This document shows, piece by piece, positions 2,102-30,110 of a DNA stretch of 64,000 nucleotides. A program made the translations under genes and the position numbers. Position 1 is the first letter of the stretch. Each line of letters starts with the position of its first letter. Source of the DNA: Bigelowiella natans CCMP2755 (lineage: Eukaryota > Protista > Cercozoa); NCBI GenBank assembly GCA_000320545.1, contig ADNK01000313.1, forward strand, positions 62,001 through 126,000, given 5' to 3'. Below the pieces are notes generated by a model, which ran no database searches, was not told where the DNA came from, and saw only the letters and a list, made by a program, of their open reading frames with translations.

Positions 2102-2294
2102 TGGGAATCGAAATCCTAAATGCGCGCCCTTCCGATCGATGTTAGTTTCCAGGTGCACAGCTCAGGAAACACTTCTTCTCATTCAAATGTTGAGCAGTGA
2201 AATCAATCAATGGGGATTTATTTGTTTACTGCCGTAATTTGTACCTAGAAATGTCTGTTTTGTCATGTCGCAAGGTGAAATTCTATGCGTTTAC

Positions 2295-3408
2295 TGTCAT
2301 TGGCGTCACTTCTGATGATCATCGACCGCTCACATGAACCGCTGCATTCATTCTTGCAACACTTTGCCTTCGTGATGGGCGTGCTGCTTCGTTCGTTCAC
2401 TCGTTCACTCGCTCATTCTCCAAAAATCTTCCTTTGCGGTGTTGTCGCAGGGTTCGCTGATGGAGGTCTGTGTCGGCAATCACCAAACTCCACAAAGTCC
2501 TTTGGCTTCATTGCTTCGCACACTTCTTGTGATCTTTTTCTTCTTTTTCTTCTGTCGTTCGTGCGTTGCCATGTTGCACGTCCAGACACATTCGTGTGTT
2601 CTGCTCGACGCTGTCTGCGATGGCAAGATCGTGTCGTGCGGGTACCACAGCACTGGCGGACGGGTGATCCTTGTTTCTTCTCGATGGCCTTGCGTTCAAC
2701 GGTTCCACATCGGAAACACTGCACTTCAGTTCGTTCACTCGCTCACATGCGTCACGCGTGATGACGTGATCACGTGCACAGCTAGACATCTGTGCATCTG
2801 AAAACACTTCGTTCGTGCGTGCCCAGCACCCACTTGCTGTTCTGGTGAGCAGTGACGGCGTGCACGCACAAGCGCGTGCGGCATCACGTGCAGGACCACA
2901 ACCACCCGAGCTCCACGGTGTGCTGCGCAGCAAGGTCGCGCCGTGCAGCAGCGTTCAGTGTGCCACCGCATGCACAAGCTGGAAAGCTCAGATTGCCTGC
3001 GCTGCACCATGCGATGTTCAGATGATTTGCATTGCACTTTGTCTGTGTGTGTCACCTGCACTGGTGCAGTGCGCGCGTGTTCAGCGCATGTGTGCACGGC
3101 GAGCGCGGGCCACGGCGGATGGTGCAAAGCTAGAAAGCTGCGCGGCTGCCAGCGCTTGCACACACTGCATTTCATCCATCAGTCTCAACTACCGTGCTAG
3201 CATGTGTCGCAACGCAAGCACGTTTTGTGCAACTGATCCCTAATCCATGGCTAGCTCTAGCTAGCTAGCAGAGCTACTAGACATCATGCACATGCGCACA
3301 CTCACATCCCGCCACATGCTAGCATGCGTGCATGTGAGCAGACGCATCATTTCATCATTTGACGTAGACGCATCTAGGTGCCATGCATTGCTGCTTGCGC
3401 GCCGACTT
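2295..3408. other. TpA-depleted, TG/CA-rich degenerate sequence flanking the DIRS element
   Basis: Remaining TpA are almost only in CTAG, CTAC/GTAG or GTAC. A short direct repeat (GTTCGTTCACTCG) occurs at ~2390 and ~2729. The ORFs here are rich in Cys/His and nearly lack Tyr. Confidence 0.75.
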
Positions 3409-3574
3409 CTTGTCCTCGCTTGGCCCGTTGGGCCGCGCTCGGCCAAACTGCGACAAGCAGCGCTGCTGCAGCTCAGCAATTGAACGTCACTGATGATCAC
3501 GACTTCCCATTTTTGACATTTCATGCTCAAGATCGCGCGCAAAATTGACAAATTGTTTTCTTCAGATTTCCCGC
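3409..3574 (+). repeat. DIRS left inverted terminal repeat
   Basis: 3477-3574 is the reverse complement of 7707-7804. 3409-3496 is the reverse complement of 7563-7652 (ICR). Confidence 0.92.
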
Positions 3575-3618
3575 GCTCAAGGTCGTGCCAGCCCCGCGCA
3601 GTGGATGTCCGCCCCGGA

Positions 3619-4914
3619 ATGAAGCAAGCAACAAGAACCCAATCTGCAAGGAAACCAACTCCTTTCTCTCCTAGCAGAGTCAGAAACCGAACGCCGCCAT
3701 TGATCCTGTGCATCCCATTGGCAGGCGTTCTGGCTGGCAACACACCGACCCTGCCACAAAACGGAAGCATTTGCGATGCTGTGGATGCATTGGTGCATTG
3801 AAACATCCATCGGATGAGTCGTGTGTGATGTGCTTGCACATCACACACACGCGTCCACGGTGAGCAGCCATTGATCAGGTTGCAGGTTGTTCAGGAAATT
3901 GTCCAGTGTTCTGAACTTCTGATGCACGTGAAGTGCGCATTTGTTGAGCTGACGCACATCCGACACGAGGCGATGTTCGCCCTTTTTCTTTTCAGGAATC
4001 AGGAAAGAGGGGGAGATGAACCCCTCAGAGTCGTTTGTTGCCATTGTCGCTTTGCCCTCCTCGATGAGGGTTTTGCAGCCTTCGCGTGTGGGTTGGCGTC
4101 GTCGCTGCTGCTTCGGTTCTGACAAGCAGACGGGCGGACAAGTTTCGGTTCGGTTGTGAACGGCATCTTGCAGCCTGAGTTGTGCACCTGTTGCGTCAGG
4201 GATGATCCTGATTTGAGCACGAGACGAAACAGGGCAAGTGGTTCCGATTGGGACGTCATCGGCGGCCTCGACGGTTCCGTCCTCCTCGGAAAGTGCGGCC
4301 CCTGCCGCGGCCCCTTTGGCCACGTCCGGTTGGATTGCATTGGAACGGACTGAAGTTGAGCCATTTGTCACGTCTCGGTTTGCGTCGGTGAGTTCCTGGG
4401 AGTTGGCTGCATTTTTGAAGTTTTTTGTCAGCGTCGAGTTCCGCGTTGAGTGTTTTCGTTTCTTCTGCGGATGGCACGTTGTCTCTGGAAGTGCCCGGCT
4501 TCGGAGTGGATTTGAGCGCTTGTTTTTTGGCGATGTGTTTGCATTGTTGCAGAGCTCTGGCAGGGACGTTGCTTGTTGCGAGTGATGAACGCCGGGCTTT
4601 TGTGAAAATTTCTTCTTCTCTTTCGAGCTTGCCTTCATTGAGCAATCTCGCCAATTCAACGTGAATTTCTGCGGCAGCTGCGCAAGCCAAGTTGGATGCC
4701 GACCAGCAGTCTTCGAACAGTTCGCGGATGTCAGCGGCTCCTTGTTTGATGAGAAATGACGCCAGGGTGGGTGGTTTCGGCAGCGTGCTGAGCAGCTTGA
4801 GTTGCGCGCAGAGTTTTTTGCAGTCCGCTGTCTGCAGTGGGATGTGATCTTGGGCGCTGTTGATGCGCAGACCTCAAAATTTGTCGAGGCCCTCTTCGTC
4901 CTCTCTTTGTTGGG
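3619..4914. pseudogene. DIRS gag-like ORF1, split by the inversion
   Basis: N-terminus MKQATRTQSARKPTPFSPSRVRN is on + (3619-3688). The continuation is on - from ~4912 (QQREDEEGLDKF*, internal TGA) to 4256, ending in a basic RGRGRGR tail. Assignment is positional. Confidence 0.6.
3689..4130 (-). pseudogene. N-terminal half of DIRS reverse transcriptase (in the inverted segment)
   Basis: GFISPSFLIPEKKKGEHRLVSDVRQLNK...LQPDQWLLTVD, then after a 32-bp insertion SSDGCFNAPMHPQHRKCFRFVAGSVCCQPERLPMGCTGS. This matches RT motifs D-L-x-D-x-Y-F-x-V-P-I-H-P...Y-F-R-F...Y-Q...LP-x-G with Y->C/H, L->S/P, V->A and I->M changes. Confidence 0.88.
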
Positions 4915-6265
4915 AAGCGTGGTCAGCACCCTGCCTCACCACCCTGCGAACCTGCTTTCCACAGGTCGACTTCTTCTCGCATGTCGACGACGTTTGCATG
5001 CAACTTCCTAGATGCAGACCACAGGTGGCAAACTCGTGGACACAAGCGCTGCGATGGGCCTTCCGAATCCTCAACGCACCCCTCAAAAACCACAAATCAC
5101 CTTGGAAGCCATCTCGCACCATCACCCACCTGGGATTCACGATCAACACCAACACTTTGAGCACGTCCATGCCAAAAGCAAAGGCTGAGAAAGTGACCAA
5201 ACAAGTGCGCAAGTGCCTCATCAACAAAAACGCCGCCAACACACTGAGACTCAATGCACTCGCGTCAACAATCGGGCAAGTGATCGCTTCATTGCCCGCA
5301 GTCAAAGAAGGACGCCTGCACGCAGCTCACCTTTGCCACACACAAACACAGGTGATCCGCAAGGCGGGATGGAACCACGCGGCAAGAGCGACACTGACCC
5401 CACGAGCTCAGGCGGAGCTCACATGGTGGCTGGCATGCCCATCCTGCATCCGCGCCAGACCAGTGTCCGCCAGGTGCACCCACCACGAAATCACCGCCAT
5501 GGCACCCGATGCATCTGATCTGATGATGGCTGGGGTACCATTGTCTGATGCTCGTCCACCGCACTGGCACAGACACTCATCCCGCCGCGAACGGCGGAAA
5601 GGGATCGCCTGCAAAGAATTGCTTGCGGTTTGGGAGTCAATTCAACGATGCCAACACAAGGTCAAAAGTTCCCACCTCAACGTTCGGTGCAACAACTCCG
5701 TGGCAGCAGCGGCGCTCAACAAGTGGGGTTCACGTGATGAATCCCTGCGCCACCTGTCACTTCAAGTGTTCTCATGGGCTGTGTCCACCGACACACTGCT
5801 GACCGCCACCTGCGTTGCGTGCCACCTCACAGCAACTCTTTGTCAGACCGACTGTCACGAGGTCTGCCCACATCCCCCTCCGTCCTCGCGGAAACGAAAA
5901 CGCTGGCATCAGGTGTCCGAGCGGCAAGAGGCCGCTTGCGGTGGACCATTGCCCACAAAACATTCCGCACCATGCGCAAACATCTCGGCGTCACAAACTT
6001 CACCAACGATTTCATCACACACCCCAAGACGCTCATCGTGCTCAACCTCAATCAGACCAACTCCCTGCTCAACAAAATCGAACAGACGAAAGAGACAGCG
6101 ATGGTGCTCGCACCGCTGTGGCCCAGCGTGGAATGGTTCAACAGAATCACTCGCCTGTCAACGTCTCTGCCTCACATCCTTCACCCACGCACAGTGAAAG
6201 CAATGAACCAATCCAAAAAGTCTTGTCCCGGCTGGAGTTGGATTTCAGTGAGGCCATCCGGGAAG
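4915..6265 (+). pseudogene. C-terminal DIRS RT, RNase H and degenerate methyltransferase-like domain
   Basis: FFSHVDD (YxDD), KS...PSRTITHLGFTINT, RNaseH motifs PDAS, KELLAV, NNSVAAAALNKWGSR and NSLSDRLSR (frameshift ~5820), then the DIRS MT-like tail LLNKIEQ...AMVLAPLWPSVEWF. Confidence 0.88.
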
Positions 6266-7572
6266 CGGAAATTGCGCGCAAAGTTCCGCACGAGGCTCAA
6301 CTCCTCCAACGGATCGCAGCGTCCATTGTGTCCAATCACAATGCTGCATGGAAGGCCCTCCGACAGTGCACTTCGGAGAATCCGGCTGCACTGCGAACGA
6401 CACCTCCGAATTCTTCAGAAGACCAGATGCCAGCTCTTCTTCTCGCGGCGTTCGGGACCCACACACGTCGCACACGTGGAAGCGGTTCACGCTTCCAACA
6501 AACGGCCGCTGCGGTCGGCCATTGCCTTCAGACCTTGCACGCCACACCCACGGACATCATCCGAAACACCTCCAAACCTGTGGCCCGCAAACTGCAAGGT
6601 TCCACACCACGTGAAGACGTCCCAAACGTCCACGACGCACTGCGACAGACGTGCGCACTGCACCGCCAGGACACTGCGAAGGCCCGACGAGCACGTCTCA
6701 TCGCAGCGATGATGCTGCTCGGCACTGAGCGCTTCTCTGACCTCGCCAGACACTTCAGAGACGACAGATCCTTGCAATTCACGGTGCATCGACTCGATGC
6801 ACCGGAATGGGCCCGCAAACACAGGTTCACGGACCTGGACACGTTCCACCGATGTGGCTACCTGCGTCAGCATCAGACCCTGCACGAGCACGACTTCATC
6901 GTGCTGAAGCCACGACCGTTTCACGCCAAAACGGCCTTGGCCAAGGGCCGCCTGTGCGGCAACTGGATTCGCCTCACCGAAAACAGATTCGCAGAAGCGC
7001 CATGCCCGGTGCTCGCAACCATTGGCTGCATCGACGAGACTCGCACACTCCGCATTTCATCCCGCGCACCCATCGGGAATGCGGACAAAGCCGGGTCACC
7101 GGATGACACCGGAAGGAATCACAGACCCGCCAAACCATTGTTCACACAACTCAACCGCAGCCTCCGTGAACCCCTGCAACCGGACACCCTTTCCGGAATC
7201 ATCGCCCGAGAGACACTCAAGCCCTTGGACCTGCACGGCCGGTTCGTCCCGTTCTCGCACTCACTCAAAGCAACTTCGGCGTCTTGCAAGATGGCGCACG
7301 GCGTTCCACTGCCACAGGTCTTGAAAATGGGTGACTGGTCCTCACATCATGCCTTCTTCAAACACCACTGCTGTCAACCAATGACCGAGGTCAACCCGGG
7401 AAGATTGCGTGATGCTTTGCTCCACGACTGGCGCCTCAGTCGAGCACACGTGCTTCTGCATTCGGTGCGACCACCACTGCAACGGCTAGACACCAACAAC
7501 GACGAGGCGATGGCTCACGCATTGGCTCTCCAACGGGCTGGCTCTGTCTCTCGACGACGTGGTCATCAGTGA
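5815..7572 (+). pseudogene. DIRS tyrosine recombinase (catalytic Tyr region reads HHCC)
   Basis: Motifs GTERFSDL, HAKT, CPV, LF, SHSLKATSAS and MGDWSSHHAFFKHHCC follow the DIRS YR R...H-x-x-R...W...Y layout. Only 1 Tyr in 585 codons. The true start is probably downstream of 5815. Confidence 0.88.
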
Positions 7573-7689
7573 CGTTCAATTGCTGAGCGCTGCAGCAGCG
7601 CCGCTTGTCGCAGTTTGGCCGAGCGCGGCCCAACGGGCCAAGCGAGGACAAGCGTAGACAGGCAAGCTGCTGCAGCGAGGCAATTGAAC
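7563..7689 (+). repeat. DIRS internal complementary region (ICR)
   Basis: First part is complementary to the element's 5' end (3409-3496). Second part (7651-7689) is complementary to its 3' end (7796-7834). They join at GAGGACA-AG-CGTAGAC. Confidence 0.92.
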
Positions 7690-7706
7690 CCACCCGACCC
7701 ACCCTT

Positions 7707-7834
7707 GCGGAAAATCCGAAGAAAACAATTTGTCAATTTTGCGCGCGATCTTGAGCATGAAATGTCAAAAATGGGAAGTCGTAATCATCAGCAACGTTCA
7801 ATTGCCTCGCTGCAGCAGCTTGCCTGTTTACGCT
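7707..7834 (+). repeat. DIRS right inverted terminal repeat plus 3' extension
   Basis: 7707-7804 is an inverted copy of 3477-3574. 7805-7834 is a unique extension matched by the ICR. Confidence 0.92.
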
Positions 7835-8363
7835 GTGATGTGTGCACGACGTGTGCGACACGATGCATTCACATGCAATGAGTAGACATGATGGTGGAGA
7901 CAAAGCAAATCATCTTGAGCGCTGTGGCTGATGTGCTTTGCAAAGCTACATCAGGATGACAATAAAAAAAAATCACATTTGTTACATCCGTCTCTAGCTC
8001 ATAGTGTGACACACTTGTCATCGACGATGTACATTTAGCACGTGACGCGGGCGTAACAACAACTAGACAATGCTAAAAGGCCACAAACGTGAATGCTGAA
8101 ATACAAAATCGCAGAATCAAACAATCAAATCTTAGTGCTGTATCCGCCGTATTGCACAGCTCTAGAGCTACATGATTAGGACTAGAGGATGACGATTGAA
8201 AAAATGTAATCTTTTCATTGCCATCCATCTCATATGACACAGGGTAGCGCATGTGCTATGAGAGCGGATCATGCAATGATGCACTGCTGCATACAGAGTT
8301 ACACATTAGGATATATAATAAATAATAAGATCTTGCACAGTAGTAGTTGCATTAGCCGTGATA

Positions 8364-21099: not shown

Positions 21100-22270
21100 A
21101 ACAGCAATTTTTATACGTAAATTGTTCAGATGAAGAATGAGAATGGTGACCATTAATGACAGTGCAATTTTCAAATTCATCATGGTGTTGTGCATGAAAT
21201 CTCATGTGATGACGGGTTTTCATGCAATTTGTGTTTGCGAGCGAACTTGTGAACTGTTTTGACGTTGAATTGTCGCATCAAAAATGCACATCCAATTGCA
21301 TGACAACAAATCACTAATCTAGTCAACCATAACATTGGCATTTTAGTGTTTTCTGAGTTCGATCGCATGCATGCAGGCAGGATCGAAAGTTTTTGTGGCT
21401 GCTACATGCGTGCATTGCCTAGATAGATTTAGCGATGGCTGCGCCTCTCTTGCTACGGTCCGCAATGGAAAGTCCATCCGCAAACAATTCGATTTTTGAT
21501 GGTTGATGTGCACAGCGAGCTAGCGAAAGCTAGAGTTCTGATGCAAAGCAAACGGCAAATGACATTGTGCGTAGAGATGTGTCCATTTTTCTGATCCATG
21601 TGCATTTCATGACACCGCACACGTGTCAAATGTGGCATTTGCTTCCTCACATTGTCCTCGGGACAACATGGATTTTCCAAGCTGGCATAGATTGCCCACC
21701 CCACAGATGGCATACATTCAGAATTCATGCTAGCATGCGTGATAGCAATGCTTGGCAATTTCAATTTGACACCGCCAGTGACACGAGAGGATGGAAGGAA
21801 GCCAAGATGAGACAGCTGCACAGCTCTTGTCAAATTATTGTGACCATTTTTCTTCAAAATCAGACAAAGCAGCAGTGATTGTATCGTAGTTGGGAATGTA
21901 GAATTGGGGTCAGGTTGTGACCCCTAGACCCAGCAGCTAGAGCAGGTGCAGTGTACCGTACCCAAAAATTGCGTCAACAATAAAGCCATGCACAGCACGC
22001 AGCACGTATTTGCATCCATGACAGAGCGGCTCAATTGTGCACTTACAAGTTGCTACTCAACTAGTCCTGCATGCATGCACATCATGGGACGGATGCAATG
22101 ACTAATTTAAATTTTGTCAATGGTAATCCTAATGTAGCTATGCAAAGTATTATTAGTTGTAGACTCATCATGGAACTGAATTGAACCATGAGCATGACGA
22201 ATCCAGAAGCTAAGGAGTTTGTACTCGCTTTCGTTGATTTGTCATGCAACAACAACGTCAGCACGGCGCG
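21100..22270. other. Partially TpA-depleted intergenic block (degenerate repeat remnant)
   Basis: AT-rich yet TpA-poor, with TG/CA excess and survivors often in CTAG. Lies between the converging PFKFB and DedA 3' ends. Confidence 0.6.
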
Positions 22271-24975: not shown

Positions 24976-25329
24976 TTTCTACAAAAGCGATTTCGATTGT
25001 GCTCAAATTATGATTAGCCAGCATGACCAGAAGTGCAGCACTGTTTGAATAAAGACTAGCGATCTCCATATCCTGTCATCAAATGATAGGCTTTATCTCA
25101 CAATTTATTCCTGTAGGGCTTGCGGCCTACTTCTTCCAGGTCACAGGCGGCATGGAGTTCGGACTTTAAACTCACGGCATAATGCATGTTCAAGCGACAG
25201 ATTACGTTCAACAAGCACATATTTAGGCAGAAATCGAAACCCACATGTTCGTTATCGTCATATTTATTTCACTCGCCCCTTGCTGCTTGTGTTTTGCGTT
25301 CGCCTGTGCTGCCTCGCGGCTTAAGCGGT

Positions 25330-27560
25330 GTGGATGATGCTGCAAAAGCCGTGTCATTGGTGCACACAGGTGATGGATGAAAGGTCAATGCTGTGTGTTT
25401 CAAGCATGCAATCACATGTAGCTGGACATGTGCACATGCATCTCACCATGCCCGCGCTGTCTAGCCATGTCAGTGCATTGTTGTGTGTGCGCTTTCTCAA
25501 ACACAACGCACGAAAGCGCGCTGGCTACATGGCGTCGACTGGGGCTGTCACCGAATGCACAACGAGGACAATGTGGGCTGCAGTCGTGCAACAAGCCATG
25601 GCAAGCAGCAATGCCAACAGATTTCGACAGATTTTCGGCTCATGCAACTGAGATCGACGTGATGTCACCACGTTGCACGCAACTGCGAAGTGAACAGCAC
25701 AGGTGCGCACGACCATGCAGGTGTAGCAAACCAGTGTGCCACTTGGGACAGAGGCGCTGTGACGCACTTTCCAACACTATGTGTCTTTGGCAATTTGTCA
25801 ATTCGGCAAATTGCAACATGCAATTGCAGTGCTAGTCACCATGAGTCATGGAGGCTGCATTGTCGCACGCAAGCAAAATCCCCGATGTTGTCAACAATGT
25901 GTTCAAATTGTCTCTGCTGCCTAGCAACATGTCAACGACAATGTGACTTGTGTTCACAATGTCAATGACAATGCAACTTGCATTTGTGCGACGTGTGTTT
26001 CAAAATCAATTGGTTCATCAAAGCACATTTTTGCAGGTGCATGCTGATGATGTTGAACAGACAGTGTCAATGAGAATCTCATGTTGTCAACAGCTAACAA
26101 TGTGTCATGTTGTTGACAACACATGTTCAGAACACATGCTGCTGCAATGCAACTGTGCAACACAGTGTCGACAGTGTGTGTTTTGAACTCATGGTGCACT
26201 CACGAAAACGACAAAATGTCAAATTGTCATGATGTTGTCACGACGCACGCATGGACATTGATGTCCATGTGCGTGTGAGCCGTCTACGACATGTGTGTCA
26301 CCCACTTCACATGTGCCTGCAGCCACACGTGTGCCAAACAATGGCGCCCACGTGTGCATGCATGCATCCATGTGTGCCATGTGTTGCTTGTCGTAGCAAC
26401 AGCTGAACCACGTGTGAACTGCATGCATTGCAGCTGCACTTGGCAATTTTCGGCACGTGTGTAGTGGCTTGTTTGGTGCATGTGTGGATGCGAACAGAGC
26501 ATGTGTGCTTTTCAAGTGCATGTGGTGTGCATGGGCACGTGTGTTCTTTGCGCGCACACGCACATGGACATTGATGTCCATGCACGCGTCAGCGTGCCCA
26601 GGTCACGCAGAAGGTGCAGCAAAAACGCACAGTGTGACCACAACCATGCAGAGCAGTGATGAACGAGGTGTGTCCACACTTCCCAGCTCCAGAGCTTTGA
26701 AGCCAGCTTGCGTGTTGCACTCGTCAGCAAACTGCAACGGCTTGCTAGCTTGGGCACCACTGGACCACAAAGAGCACAAGTTCAAAAGGAAGGAAACAGG
26801 TTGTGAGTTCTGGCCCAGTGTTCTTCAACGTCGCACGTCCTGCTCGCAATTGCGCTTTCAGGTTCACTTCCTGTCACCATCGCAATCATCGCAACGTGAT
26901 GGACACCACGCATCACTGTGTCCATTGAGTGTGACAAGCAATGAGCAAACGTTGTGAACAAACGTGATGGCCAACGGTGGACCACAAACAAACAAACATG
27001 GTGACACGATGAAAAACTGCACTTCCAAAAACGTTGGTGAACCAGCAGGATTCGAGAAAGAAAGAAACTTGACGATGGACAAGAGCGTGCTGATTTGATT
27101 GGAACAAGAACAAGAACAAGAACAAGAACAATGATGATGAACTGCACTTCCAAACGATGAACAATGAACAATGAACACTGGTGATGAACCAATCTTCCAA
27201 AGTGTTGCAAGACGTTTGCAGTGTGCGAACTGCAGTGCCTCGAACGCACTGGCTCGTGTGAGGACTGACTGGAGAACCAGAAGGTTTTTTTTCAAATGGG
27301 CGTCTAGCCATCACGGAACAACACAACTGATGGCGATCACGGAACAGCACAACTAACAGCGATGTGGCGGCGGCGCAAAGCGTCCACTCTGAGCAGGAAC
27401 TTCCTGAAGGCTGCAATGAACAATGAACAATGATGGCAAACTGCATTTCCAAAACGCTACGGTGATCCACGAACCCACTTTTGATCACCAAACTGACTAA
27501 ATGTGTTGACAATGTTGTGCTGTTTGTGAGCCACATCTGACGACGAATGAAAACGTGTTC
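25330..27560. repeat. Strongly TpA-depleted degenerate repeat block with internal palindromes and imperfect tandem units
   Basis: Very few TpA, nearly all in CTA/TAG context. CATGGACATTGATGTCCATG occurs at 26250 and 26563. AACTGCA(C/T)TTCCAAA units occur at ~27016, ~27140 and ~27439. (ACAAGA)n at ~27104. Confidence 0.8.
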
Positions 27561-27698
27561 TTTGAAAAAAATGATGAGGACATATCTTGAATTATTTGTC
27601 TAAATACGTGATCCCAAACACTCTCAGACACGATCAATCCAAGAAGAAAGGGGGCTGGGAAGGGGAGGACAAGCACAGCGTCATCGTTGTCATCATCA

Positions 27699-28946
27699 AT
27701 GTCAATAGCCACCTGCCTACCTCTACTTGTCATCTCGCTTCTGCAGACCATCTCACACGCGAGAACGGACACGATGATGGCTTGCCAGGCTCCGGGGCAA
27801 TGTAGTGTCGACGAACCCGAAACAACCCATCTCTCACCACCTCAAGCCTCTCCATATGCAGATTATATCCTTAAACAGCCAAGAGAAAACGCACGAGAGA
27901 GGCCTATGTCAGCAAAGTTCGTGAATCTTCTCGATGAGCCAGTCCACCAGTACTGGGATGATGGGTCACAAGAGGGAAAGTTTCAGGGGGGCATTATGCC
28001 TGGGGAGACAACACACGGGACCTACAGCACTCATGTATTTTTCTTCAAGCGGAAATCAAGTGGAGAGGAAGTTGCTCGGTACGCGATGAATTATGACATC
28101 CCAATGTATATAATACATGGAAATGACCCAAAGATCCTAAACTCGGAAAAGTATGAGGCGTACCAAAAGGAACTCCAATTTCTCCTCAAGTATCGAAAAG
28201 AAAAGGGGCAGCCTTGGCTATCTATTTACCCGCGAGATCCACCAGTTCTGAAAATTTGGGAAGCAATTTCTGTAGGACAGCAGCACGCGGTCGAATCTAA
28301 TTGGGGCCATTGGGATGGCTCTACATTCAAAGATCACTTCGATGCTAAGTTGGTGGCATTGGCACAAAAACCAAAGGTATTTCTGATCGAGAATCTCATC
28401 TCAGAGGCTGAGTGTGAGCACATCATTGATCTAGCTCGAAGTCGTGTTGCGAAGTCGGTAATTGGAGTCTCCGCTGAGGCTTTCACAGATGAAACACGGA
28501 CGAGTAGAACAGGGTGGATTTACAGGCACGAATCACCCTATATGGAACGCATGTTTAAACGTTTTGCTGACGTTCTTGGCATGACCTCTGAGCAGCTACA
28601 GACAACCAGAAATGCGGAGCCTTTGCAGGTGGTACATTATGCCACGAACCAGCACTACTACAACCACTTCGACTTCTTTGCCACAGGCTCGAATAAGTAT
28701 CGCTTTTCCACTCTCCTTATGTACCTCAACAATGCTACGAGTCCTAAAGCTGGGGGTGGGACTGGATTCCCGAAGGCTTTCGGAGGTAAAGGGCTCAAGG
28801 TGCGACCACCACGTGGATCTGGACTTCTCTTCTATTCAATGCTTGAGGATGGCAACTGTGATGAATATTCTGAGCATACTGGTCTCCATGTGCTGGAAGG
28901 TGAGAAATGGGTAGCGAACTTATGGATATGGGACCCCAACCGATGA
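27699..28946 (+). CDS. Secretory prolyl 4-hydroxylase (2OG-Fe(II) oxygenase) with N-terminal VHL-beta-like domain; intronless
   Basis: Signal peptide MSIATCLPLLVISLLQTISHA, FVNLLDEPVHQYWDDG...TYSTHVF, and P4H motifs EAECEHII, RTS, EPLQVVHY, HFD, TLLMYLN, GGGTGFP, EHTG and GEKWVANLWI. Confidence 0.92.
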   Translation: MSIATCLPLLVISLLQTISHARTDTMMACQAPGQCSVDEPETTHLSPPQASPYADYILKQPRENARERPMSAKFVNLLDEPVHQYWDDGSQEGKFQGGIMPGETTHGTYSTHVFFFKRKSSGEEVARYAMNYDIPMYIIHGNDPKILNSEKYEAYQKELQFLLKYRKEKGQPWLSIYPRDPPVLKIWEAISVGQQHAVESNWGHWDGSTFKDHFDAKLVALAQKPKVFLIENLISEAECEHIIDLARSRVAKSVIGVSAEAFTDETRTSRTGWIYRHESPYMERMFKRFADVLGMTSEQLQTTRNAEPLQVVHYATNQHYYNHFDFFATGSNKYRFSTLLMYLNNATSPKAGGGTGFPKAFGGKGLKVRPPRGSGLLFYSMLEDGNCDEYSEHTGLHVLEGEKWVANLWIWDPNR

Positions 28947-29199: not shown

Positions 29200-30110
29200 T
29201 CTAGAACTGTGTGATCGCCATTGATCCAGACATGCGACACATGCTGGTCGCCGCTCAACAATTGTAGCACACATTATGTCAAATGACACATCGACGCCAG
29301 CGTGCGCATGCGTGATGCATCATGCACTAGTATTGCATTTACAGTGCATCGTGCGCAACCATGCATGGGCAGTATTATGCGCATGGATCGACTAGCTAGA
29401 TTACTGCGTTTACACCACAAATTATGGATTATCCAAAATTTAGGATCCTGAATAGGAAGAAGCTAATAGGATTTTCGACGTGATGATTTTGGAACGGGAA
29501 ATTGCAAAAGCAGCACAATGAAGACTTGTCGCAGTGTGAGGGAGGAGCCAGAGCCTTGTTTATTCAGCAATTTGTGTGTCAGACAATCATCCGAGAAACA
29601 TCATGCAAGGACGTTTTTCTTCACATGCCACCTCGATGCGATTCTCAGCGATGCCGCAAATCGTTCAGAACTAGCTAGCTAGAGCAGGCATGCTCACAAC
29701 TGTGCTAGCATGTGTCTGTATGGGGCGGTGCCTTGCCTGATGTGCGTGCACAAAAGGATGGACGAATGTGCAAATGGACACTAGCTCGCGGTGTGCATGA
29801 TCAGGCGTGCACTATGCACGATCGAACATGCCTGACACTTGCCCCGCTAGCACGTCCACTACTGAGTCCAGAAGTCCATGCATGGAGCTTGCACACCTCT
29901 TGAACCTTGCACCTGGTCGTTTCCGTGCGCACACGTGCTTGAGCTAGCATGCACGCTGCGTGCACGTTTGAACATGGTTTGTGATCCCATCTTGCTGGCA
30001 TGCATCGCGCTTGCTTGCTGCTTGCGTTACGCTATTTTAAACAAATCACATACCTTGCTGCTGCCATGCTTGCTTGCTGTATGACGCAGGAGATGCATGT
30101 AATAAGCATG
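29200..30110. other. Partially TpA-depleted, TGCA/CATG-rich intergenic block
   Basis: TpA is scarce, especially in 29480-30020 where survivors are mostly CTAG. Lies between the converging P4H and STI1 ends. Confidence 0.65.

What the first reader, a model, noticed from the sequence alone, without database searches (positions are those of the whole stretch)
2295..7900. Repeat-targeted TpA->TpG/CpA hypermutation: a candidate inverse-RIP (A-to-G) genome defence system
Seen: by manual count the 4,426-bp DIRS element has only about 8 TpA (3672, 5009, 5536, 6859, 7487, 7655, 7782, 7829), where roughly 200 would be expected from base composition. CpG remains abundant. The ~1,400 codons of its three long ORFs contain 1 Tyr. 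Conserved residues change as TA loss predicts: RT YVDD->HVDD, GYF->GCF, KYF->KCF, YQ->CQ, YRL->HRL, L->S/P (TTA->TCA, CTA->CCA), V->A (GTA->GCA), I->M (ATA->ATG), and the YR catalytic Tyr region reads HHCC. Both Y->C and Y->H occur in the same ORF, so both strands were hit. Established: fungal RIP and 5mC decay are C->T processes that create rather than remove TpA. Inference: a DNA-level, near-saturating A:T->G:C mutator is directed at transposon/repeat chromatin and destroys catalytic Tyr residues. Candidate mechanisms are a TadA/ADAT-like DNA adenine deaminase, deamination of modified adenine, or Pol-eta-like WA->WG error-prone synthesis. I know of no characterised pathway of this kind, but cannot search the literature.
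Basis: partly seen in the sequence, partly recalled or inferred. Interest (0 to 1): 0.95.

Follow-up and report, generated by a model that had tools for sequence, protein, structure and literature searches.

The report
TpA-erased DIRS retrotransposon in Bigelowiella
A dead retrotransposon in the alga Bigelowiella natans has had almost every TA pair of bases changed to TG or CA, which removed the tyrosines its enzymes need; the process is real, but a 2026 preprint already measured it in this alga, so this is a clean fossil example and not a new system.

Summary
Of 44 Tyr in an intact marine relative, the window has 17 Cys, 12 His, 1 Tyr. The genome is the Bigelowiella natans reference. Mettrop et al. 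(bioRxiv 10.64898/2026.01.13.699255) already measured this TpA->TpG/CpA hypermutation de novo, proposed ADAT2/3, and list this locus's gene model as TpA-poor. The scan also noted it on many other stretches of this genome. Added here: (1) de novo rates by flanking base (CTAG 0 of 190; W-TA-W fastest; no detectable strand bias) predict which TAs survive; (2) 'repeat-targeted' is not supported as copy-number sensing: the element is single-copy, the loss runs 1.1 kb beyond it, and at least 40 identical copies of a young retroelement keep their TAs; (3) related DIRS from marine metagenomes of unknown host carry the same signature, in three separate places on the tree; (4) the change cannot create stop codons, so frames stay open. 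The element also has an internal inversion. The enzyme is unidentified; adenine deamination on genomic DNA is most likely (~50%).

The parts
2292..7946 (.). TpA-erased domain (change-point boundaries); wider than the element
   Evidence: change-point fit on non-CTAG TA; segment counts
2292..3408 (.). single-copy non-element flank that is also TpA-poor; 3131-3408 keeps 13 TA, 8 of them in CTAG
   Evidence: (matches only itself)
3409..7834 (+). DIRS1-like tyrosine-recombinase retrotransposon, 4,426 bp, single copy, dead; 8 TpA vs 210 expected
3409..3574 (+). left inverted terminal repeat
   Evidence: self-BLAST; the repeat finder I1/I8
3689..4915 (-). internal inversion carrying gag and the N-terminal half of RT; both breakpoints are spanned by Illumina contigs
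   Evidence: tblastx/tblastn against L032; contig pieces
4268..4915 (-). gag-like ORF1 remnant (44% identical to ORF1 of L032)
3689..4253 (-). RT N-terminal part, in three frames (GCF, KCF, CQ motifs)
4899..5825 (+). RT C-terminal part and RNase H; YxDD motif reads HVDD at 4980-4991
5819..6427 (+). C-terminal pol region at the position of the DIRS methyltransferase domain, frameshifted from RT/RH
   Evidence: pairwise match E=2e-8 to P0078, which carries PF05869
5881..7557 (+). tyrosine recombinase ORF; both candidate catalytic Tyr lost (His at 7366, Cys at 7369); the Arg of HxxR reads Lys at 7267, a non-TpA change; only Tyr left at 6859
7558..7689 (+). internal complementary region: complement of the left end (3409-3501) followed by complement of the right end (7796-7834)
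   Evidence: same layout in intact L032
7707..7834 (+). right inverted terminal repeat plus right extension; against the left ITR one site reads CA vs TG and one CA vs retained TA
25266..27353 (.). second, non-coding TpA-erased tract with the same survivor contexts

Best explanation
This is a dead DIRS1-like retrotransposon in Bigelowiella natans that sat in a locally targeted, transcriptionally silent domain where a host mutator changes TpA to TpG or CpA on chromosomal DNA until almost none is left. Shown: the spectrum, both strands hit equally, action on genomic DNA, spreading past the element, loss of catalytic Tyr, flank-dependent rate (5' C / 3' G protect, CTAG about 15-fold slower than average), no stop codons created. 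At the per-site rates measured in the NCLDV region, about 5e5 generations of exposure would give the 5 non-CTAG survivors (rough). Inferred: the target is chosen by a chromatin or silencing state that can spread, not by pairing of repeats. Inferred and untested: the chemistry is adenine deamination to hypoxanthine, read as G at the next replication, by a TadA/ADAT2-3-type enzyme or an unrecognised relative (about 50%). Confidence given is for the phenomenon plus domain-type targeting, not for the enzyme.
For: TA o/e 0.04, TG=CA excess, CG and AA untouched. TA in L032 becomes TG 44 / CA 21 / TA 1 of 103 in the window, against 27 of 52 kept in an intact control. 190 of 195 preprint mutations fall on TpA at one offset, proving G000 is the B. 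natans reference. De novo rate by site class predicts survival in fossil tracts (Spearman -0.75 to -0.88); CTAG 0 of 190, 7.2 expected, p=7e-4. No orientation bias (chi2 4.7, df 6, p=0.58). Single copy by search and read depth, RNA depth near zero in 624 million letters read. TA loss in 1.1 kb of unique flank. Six PF00383 deaminase-fold matches in the genome; the preprint names Bn78255/Bn77986.
Against: No enzyme is shown; ADAT2/3 is a housekeeping tRNA editor found in nearly all eukaryotes (own knowledge). The lack of strand bias and the dislike of TAG are unlike ADAR and fungal Tad2/3 mRNA editing, which favour UAG (own knowledge, not checked here); power is limited (190 events). No de novo TpA change at this locus is listed in the preprint, as expected for a saturated site, so present-day targeting of this element is not shown. 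No intact copy of this family exists in the assembly, so direction rests on relatives about 40% identical. The ICR/terminus pairs show no TG-vs-CA discordance (few informative sites). A defence role is not shown: the element also carries an inversion, frameshifts and an R->K change, any of which could have killed it first.
Confidence: 0.8

Rival explanations
1. Thymine-side chemistry: a TET/JBP-like enzyme oxidises T at TpA in silenced DNA (5hmU, then 5-formyl-U), which mispairs with G and gives T->C; on the palindromic TpA this looks identical to A->G.
For: In dinoflagellates 5hmU marks and silences transposons and prefers TA and TC (PMC11572971). TpA is palindromic, so sequence cannot tell which base is hit. 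A site-level, strand-symmetric context effect fits a duplex-acting enzyme.
Against: PF12851 finds nothing in G000 (weak: intron-rich genome, control rang nowhere). TC/GA are not depleted. 5hmU itself pairs with A (own knowledge).
Confidence: 0.2
2. Error-prone synthesis or base loss: a Y-family polymerase working in silenced domains (Pol-eta-like WA->WG), or an adenine glycosylase followed by Rev1 inserting C opposite the abasic site, which also gives A->G.
For: W flanks raise the rate; glycosylase plus Rev1 gives pure A->G in principle (own knowledge).
Against: AA/TT o/e 1.2-1.35 and AA kept as in controls; one AA-type change in 195; no indels or transversions in the hypermutable regions of the preprint. 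Y-family genes were not searched here.
Confidence: 0.15
3. True inverse RIP: duplicated sequences are recognised by homology and mutated.
For: Targets are transposons and viral inserts; two metagenomic assemblies of one DIRS family differ mostly by TG/CA/TA at shared sites (18 of 32 differences), so multi-copy families do get hit; young copies may be too recent.
Against: Element, left flank and NCLDV region are single-copy; >=40 copies of a young retroelement are 100% identical over 889 nt with TA o/e 1.0, one of them next to an erased DIRS remnant (best-scoring copies only, so mutated ones may exist among the 689 candidates); MA lines are clonal, with no sexual stage reported.
Confidence: 0.12
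4. Editing of the RNA or single-stranded cDNA intermediate before insertion (ADAR- or APOBEC-like).
For: DIRS elements move through RNA and single-stranded cDNA; ADAR prefers a 5' U.
Against: Both Y->C and Y->H in one frame and TG=CA excess; loss extends into non-element flanks; DNA-virus inserts mutate de novo in place.
Confidence: 0.03
5. Ancestral composition of this DIRS lineage, or an assembly artefact.
For: No intact copy in the assembly; TpA is mildly avoided in host coding DNA (o/e 0.6-0.8).
Against: Most relatives have TA o/e 0.8-0.9 and YxDD; TA-poor members need three separate changes on the tree; Illumina contigs agree base for base.
Confidence: 0.01

Closest known systems
TpA hypermutation of integrated viral sequences in Bigelowiella natans (Mettrop et al., bioRxiv 10.64898/2026.01.13.699255)
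   Same: Same organism and assembly, same TpA->TpG/CpA spectrum on both strands, silent single-copy targets, TpA-poor RT/DDE genes; this locus's gene model Bigna1|68151 is in their Table S6.
   Different: They did not annotate the locus as DIRS, and text searches of paper and supplements find no CTAG or flanking-base analysis (supplement file cut when stored), no account of untouched high-copy elements and no other organisms. Here the process is at saturation (o/e 0.04 against 0.45 in their NCLDV region).
Fungal repeat-induced point mutation (RIP; RID/DIM-2)
   Same: Dinucleotide-specific transitions on both strands of genomic DNA that destroy transposons and leak into flanks.
   Different: RIP is C->T, makes TpA and stop codons, needs duplicated sequence and a sexual cycle. 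This removes TpA, cannot make a stop, hits single-copy DNA in clonal culture and leaves identical multi-copy elements alone.
DIRS1-like retrotransposons (PMC3266345)
   Same: gag, RT/RH/MT pol, overlapping YR, ITRs, ICR complementary to both ends.
   Different: Inactive: internal inversion, frameshifts, catalytic Tyr of RT and YR lost.
TadA/ADAT2-3, ADAR and APOBEC editing
   Same: Deamination-type transitions with a 5' T/U preference (TadA, ADAR); anti-retroelement hypermutation (APOBEC3).
   Different: Those act on RNA or single-stranded DNA with strand-oriented context; here chromosomal DNA, no strand bias seen, TAG disfavoured.
Dinoflagellate TET/JBP 5hmU on transposons (PMC11572971)
   Same: Transposon-directed base modification with a TA preference.
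   Different: A silencing mark, not shown to be mutagenic; no TET/JBP match found in this genome.

Membership tests
B. natans TpA hypermutation (Mettrop 2026) | Organism is Bigelowiella natans | tested here: met
   190/195 published mutation positions land on TpA at one offset in G000; JGI model Bigna1|68151 matches the window
B. natans TpA hypermutation (Mettrop 2026) | TpA lost, TpG and CpA gained equally, other dinucleotides spared | tested here: met
B. natans TpA hypermutation (Mettrop 2026) | Same context dependence as the de novo mutations | tested here: met
   Spearman -0.75 to -0.88 over 10 site classes
B. natans TpA hypermutation (Mettrop 2026) | Ongoing de novo TpA mutation at this locus | tested here: inconclusive
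   no differences in X2 and X20; only 8 targets are left
DIRS1-like retrotransposon | ITRs plus ICR complementary to both ends | tested here: met
DIRS1-like retrotransposon | gag, RT and RNase H | tested here: met
   tblastn to L032 ORFs, which hit PF00078 and PF17917
DIRS1-like retrotransposon | Tyrosine recombinase ORF overlapping pol | tested here: met
   35% identity to L032 YR over 570 aa; relative L048 hits PF00589 at E=5e-6
DIRS1-like retrotransposon | Methyltransferase domain after RNase H | tested here: inconclusive
   right position and a pairwise match to a PF05869-bearing relative, but no direct Pfam hit in the window or its close relatives
Fungal RIP | C:G->T:A transitions that create TpA | tested here: not met
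   opposite direction
Fungal RIP | Triggered by sequence duplication | tested here: not met
   single-copy targets; identical multi-copy element untouched; caveat of copy age
Pol eta WA->WG mutagenesis | AA mutated as well as TA | tested here: not met
TadA/ADAT-type DNA adenine deamination | Enzyme that deaminates A in genomic DNA at TpA | not testable with these tools
   six PF00383 matches exist; activity needs experiment
TET/JBP thymine oxidation | TET/JBP gene in the genome | tested here: inconclusive
   no PF12851 match, but the control rang nowhere and genes are intron-rich

The most novel reading that the evidence does not exclude
The TpA mutator is not a B. natans oddity but a wider host system of marine chlorarachniophyte-like algae: it reads the TpA step in duplex chromosomal DNA within silenced domains, spares C-TA-G, ignores copy number, and kills retroelements by Tyr loss without making stop codons. 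TA-erased DIRS families in three marine metagenome assemblies plus one JGI contig (L039/L050, L040, L051), with survivors in CTA/TAG context and independent TG/CA outcomes, would be its traces in other hosts.
Probability: 0.5. Interest if true: 0.7.

Novelty: already known. Interest (0 to 1): 0.4.

Why it matters
A natural, programmable-looking A:T->G:C mutator on chromosomal DNA would be a new kind of eukaryotic genome defence and a possible source of a native DNA adenine editor. That claim belongs to the 2026 preprint. This locus adds a saturated end state with an intact relative for comparison, a context rule checked against measured mutations that any candidate enzyme must reproduce in vitro (TA only; CTAG nearly immune; W-TA-W fastest), evidence against homology sensing, and signs of the process in wild marine samples. 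In practice, TA-erased elements keep long open frames, escape Pfam and get annotated as unknown genes.

Tried and rejected
Pfam on the window ORFs: only a weak RNase H hit. Host of L039/L040/L050 not identified. 33 kb of Amorphochlora amoebiformis showed no TA-erased tract; its one 772-bp TA-free gap is a (CT)n microsatellite: uninformative. ITR/ICR pairs gave too few sites. ChlorV methylation motifs do not include CTAG. Paper searches found no report of the CTAG exception or of a like process elsewhere. Rejected: assembly artefact, ancestral composition, RNA/cDNA editing, Pol eta, 5mC decay. The tree used one single-frame segment of the window (4899-5825), without joining pieces.
Full report
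Observation. In 2295-7900 there are 24 TpA against 271 expected; inside the element (3409-7834) 8 against 210, at the eight positions listed, with TG and CA each at o/e 1.4, CG at 0.97 and AA/TT above 1. Two independent Illumina DNA assemblies cover the stretch with no differing letter in the listed pieces and at the depth of the flanks; an RNA run gives near-zero depth. The sequence is real, single-copy and close to silent in that run.

The element. Self-comparison gives the DIRS1 layout (PMC3266345): ITRs at 3409-3574 and 7707-7834 and an internal complementary region at 7558-7689 that pairs with both ends. Protein searches found intact relatives in marine metagenomes; L032 is a full element with TA o/e 0.91, YSDD and a Tyr-rich recombinase. 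Against L032 the window has gag, RT, RNase H, a C-terminal pol region and YR, but gag and the first half of RT are inverted onto the minus strand (about 3689-4915) and pol is frameshifted; contigs span both breakpoints. Of 44 aligned Tyr the window has 17 Cys, 12 His and 1 Tyr, while an intact control keeps 15 of 22 and has one His (p=1e-6). At codon-aligned TA sites the window reads TG 44, CA 21, TA 1 of 103. RT reads HVDD; both candidate catalytic Tyr of YR are gone; the HxxR Arg is Lys through a non-TpA change. TA->TG/CA cannot create a stop codon in any codon position, which explains the long open frames and the JGI gene model over this dead element.

Organism and prior work. The genome is 91.4 Mb in 3,736 contigs, the nearest named homologue of a neighbouring gene is from Amorphochlora, and the locus equals JGI model Bigna1|68151. 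A 2026 preprint (10.64898/2026.01.13.699255) reports from mutation-accumulation lines of Bigelowiella natans a 1000-fold raised rate of TpA->TpG/CpA in integrated NCLDV and virophage DNA, TpA-poor genes enriched for RT and DDE domains, and ADAT2/3 as candidate. Model 68151 is in its list of 324 low-TpA genes. Of its 211 NCLDV mutations, 195 fall in the part of contig C3187 I fetched, and 190 land on TpA at a single offset, which proves the identity of the genome. Earlier agents of this scan reached the same paper and noted the CTAG exception on other stretches.

Context rule. Survivors in the window are almost all S-TA-S. With the published positions mapped, relative de novo rates are CTAG 0 (0 of 190, 7.2 expected, p=7e-4), CTAC/GTAG 0.36, CTAA/TTAG 0.48, GTAC 0.62, up to 1.9 for ATAT. 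These rates predict survival in pooled erased tracts (Spearman -0.75 and -0.88 with two references), and three classes agree on a CTAG rate near 0.06 of the mean. For asymmetric sites the two outcomes are equally frequent (p=0.58), so the rate looks like a property of the duplex site; power is modest. At the measured per-site rates, about 5e5 generations reduce an L032-like element to the five non-CTAG survivors seen (assumes constant exposure and L032-like starting content).

Targeting. The erased domain runs 2292-7946, 1.1 kb past the left ITR into sequence that matches nothing else in the genome. The element is single-copy, as is the NCLDV region per the preprint. In contrast an RT family has over 100 matches with identical score, and at least 40 copies are 100% identical over 889 nt with TA o/e 1.0, including one that abuts a second erased DIRS remnant on C265. 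Only the best of 689 candidates were scored and the copies may be very young, so this shows that high copy number is not sufficient, not that the family is immune. A spreading silenced-chromatin domain fits better than RIP-like homology sensing (inference).

Beyond this strain. Among the relatives, L039/L050, L040 and L051 are partly erased (TA o/e 0.18-0.38) with survivors in CTA/TAG context; 11 of 12 Tyr codons left in L039 follow a C. L039 and L050, one family from two samples, differ at 32 places: 10 are TG versus CA and 8 are TA versus TG/CA, the mark of independent hits on a shared TA. On a tree of the RT/RNase H segment, TA-poor members need three separate changes among TA-normal ones. 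These families are not in the reference assembly; their hosts are unknown and could be wild Bigelowiella or relatives.

Mechanism. Shown: DNA-level, two-strand, TpA-only transitions in local domains. AA is spared, which argues against Pol eta. Editing of RNA or cDNA before insertion is excluded by flank spreading and by de novo change in DNA-virus inserts. Because TpA is palindromic, sequence cannot say whether A or T is attacked. I favour adenine deamination (about 50%; deaminase-fold genes are present), ahead of thymine oxidation (20%; precedent in dinoflagellates, but no TET/JBP match) and glycosylase or error-prone synthesis (15%). A defence role is plausible but unproven here, since inversion and frameshifts may have come first.

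Verdict. Real and well supported, already known as a phenomenon, with useful additions: DIRS as a saturated target, a context rule checked on measured mutations, evidence against copy-number sensing, and traces in environmental DIRS. Interest 0.4.

Noticed in passing
window 25266-27353; weaker at 21100-21830 and 29200-30000: Further non-coding TpA-poor tracts with the same survivor contexts; the two weaker ones look partly converted.
   Followed up: partly
window 3190-3375, 21520-21535, 29670-29690: Clusters of tandem CTAG inside TA-poor DNA; could be insertion or excision scars that persist because CTAG is nearly immune.
   Followed up: no
L042:3089-4188 (G000:C265, from about 38527): Young high-copy retroelement (RT in a 1659-aa frame; 689 DNA candidates, at least 40 identical) beside an erased DIRS remnant, with normal TA content; probably active or very recent.
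   Followed up: partly
L039 and L050 (marine metagenomes): TA-poor DIRS family that still has an open pol with YADD and a Tyr near the YR catalytic position, nearly all Tyr codons in the protected C-TAC context; either partly mutated copies or an element that survives the mutator.
   Followed up: partly
L006:750-2200 (G000:C214): TA-erased island holding short DIRS-terminus-like sequences related to this element's ends.
   Followed up: partly
window 7935-7973: Short sequence present in many other places of the genome and in RNA reads (raised depth, many loose ends), right at the edge of the erased domain.
   Followed up: no
L027-L028 (G000:C3187, about 184,000-190,000): The right end of the published NCLDV region contains a fully TA-erased block next to still-mutating sequence.
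   Followed up: no
preprint Table S2: Four T->C changes in the NCLDV list are not on TpA (ATG x3, ATT) although the text says all are; many short de novo insertions end in ACA.
   Followed up: no
window 27687-28946 (+): Intronless prolyl 4-hydroxylase-like gene with normal TA content directly beside the second erased tract; its Amorphochlora orthologue spans 12.8 kb with introns.
   Followed up: partly
G000:C1391:110667-111599: Intronless full-length C5 DNA methyltransferase match (PF00145, E=2e-76) in an intron-rich genome; four partial matches elsewhere.
   Followed up: no
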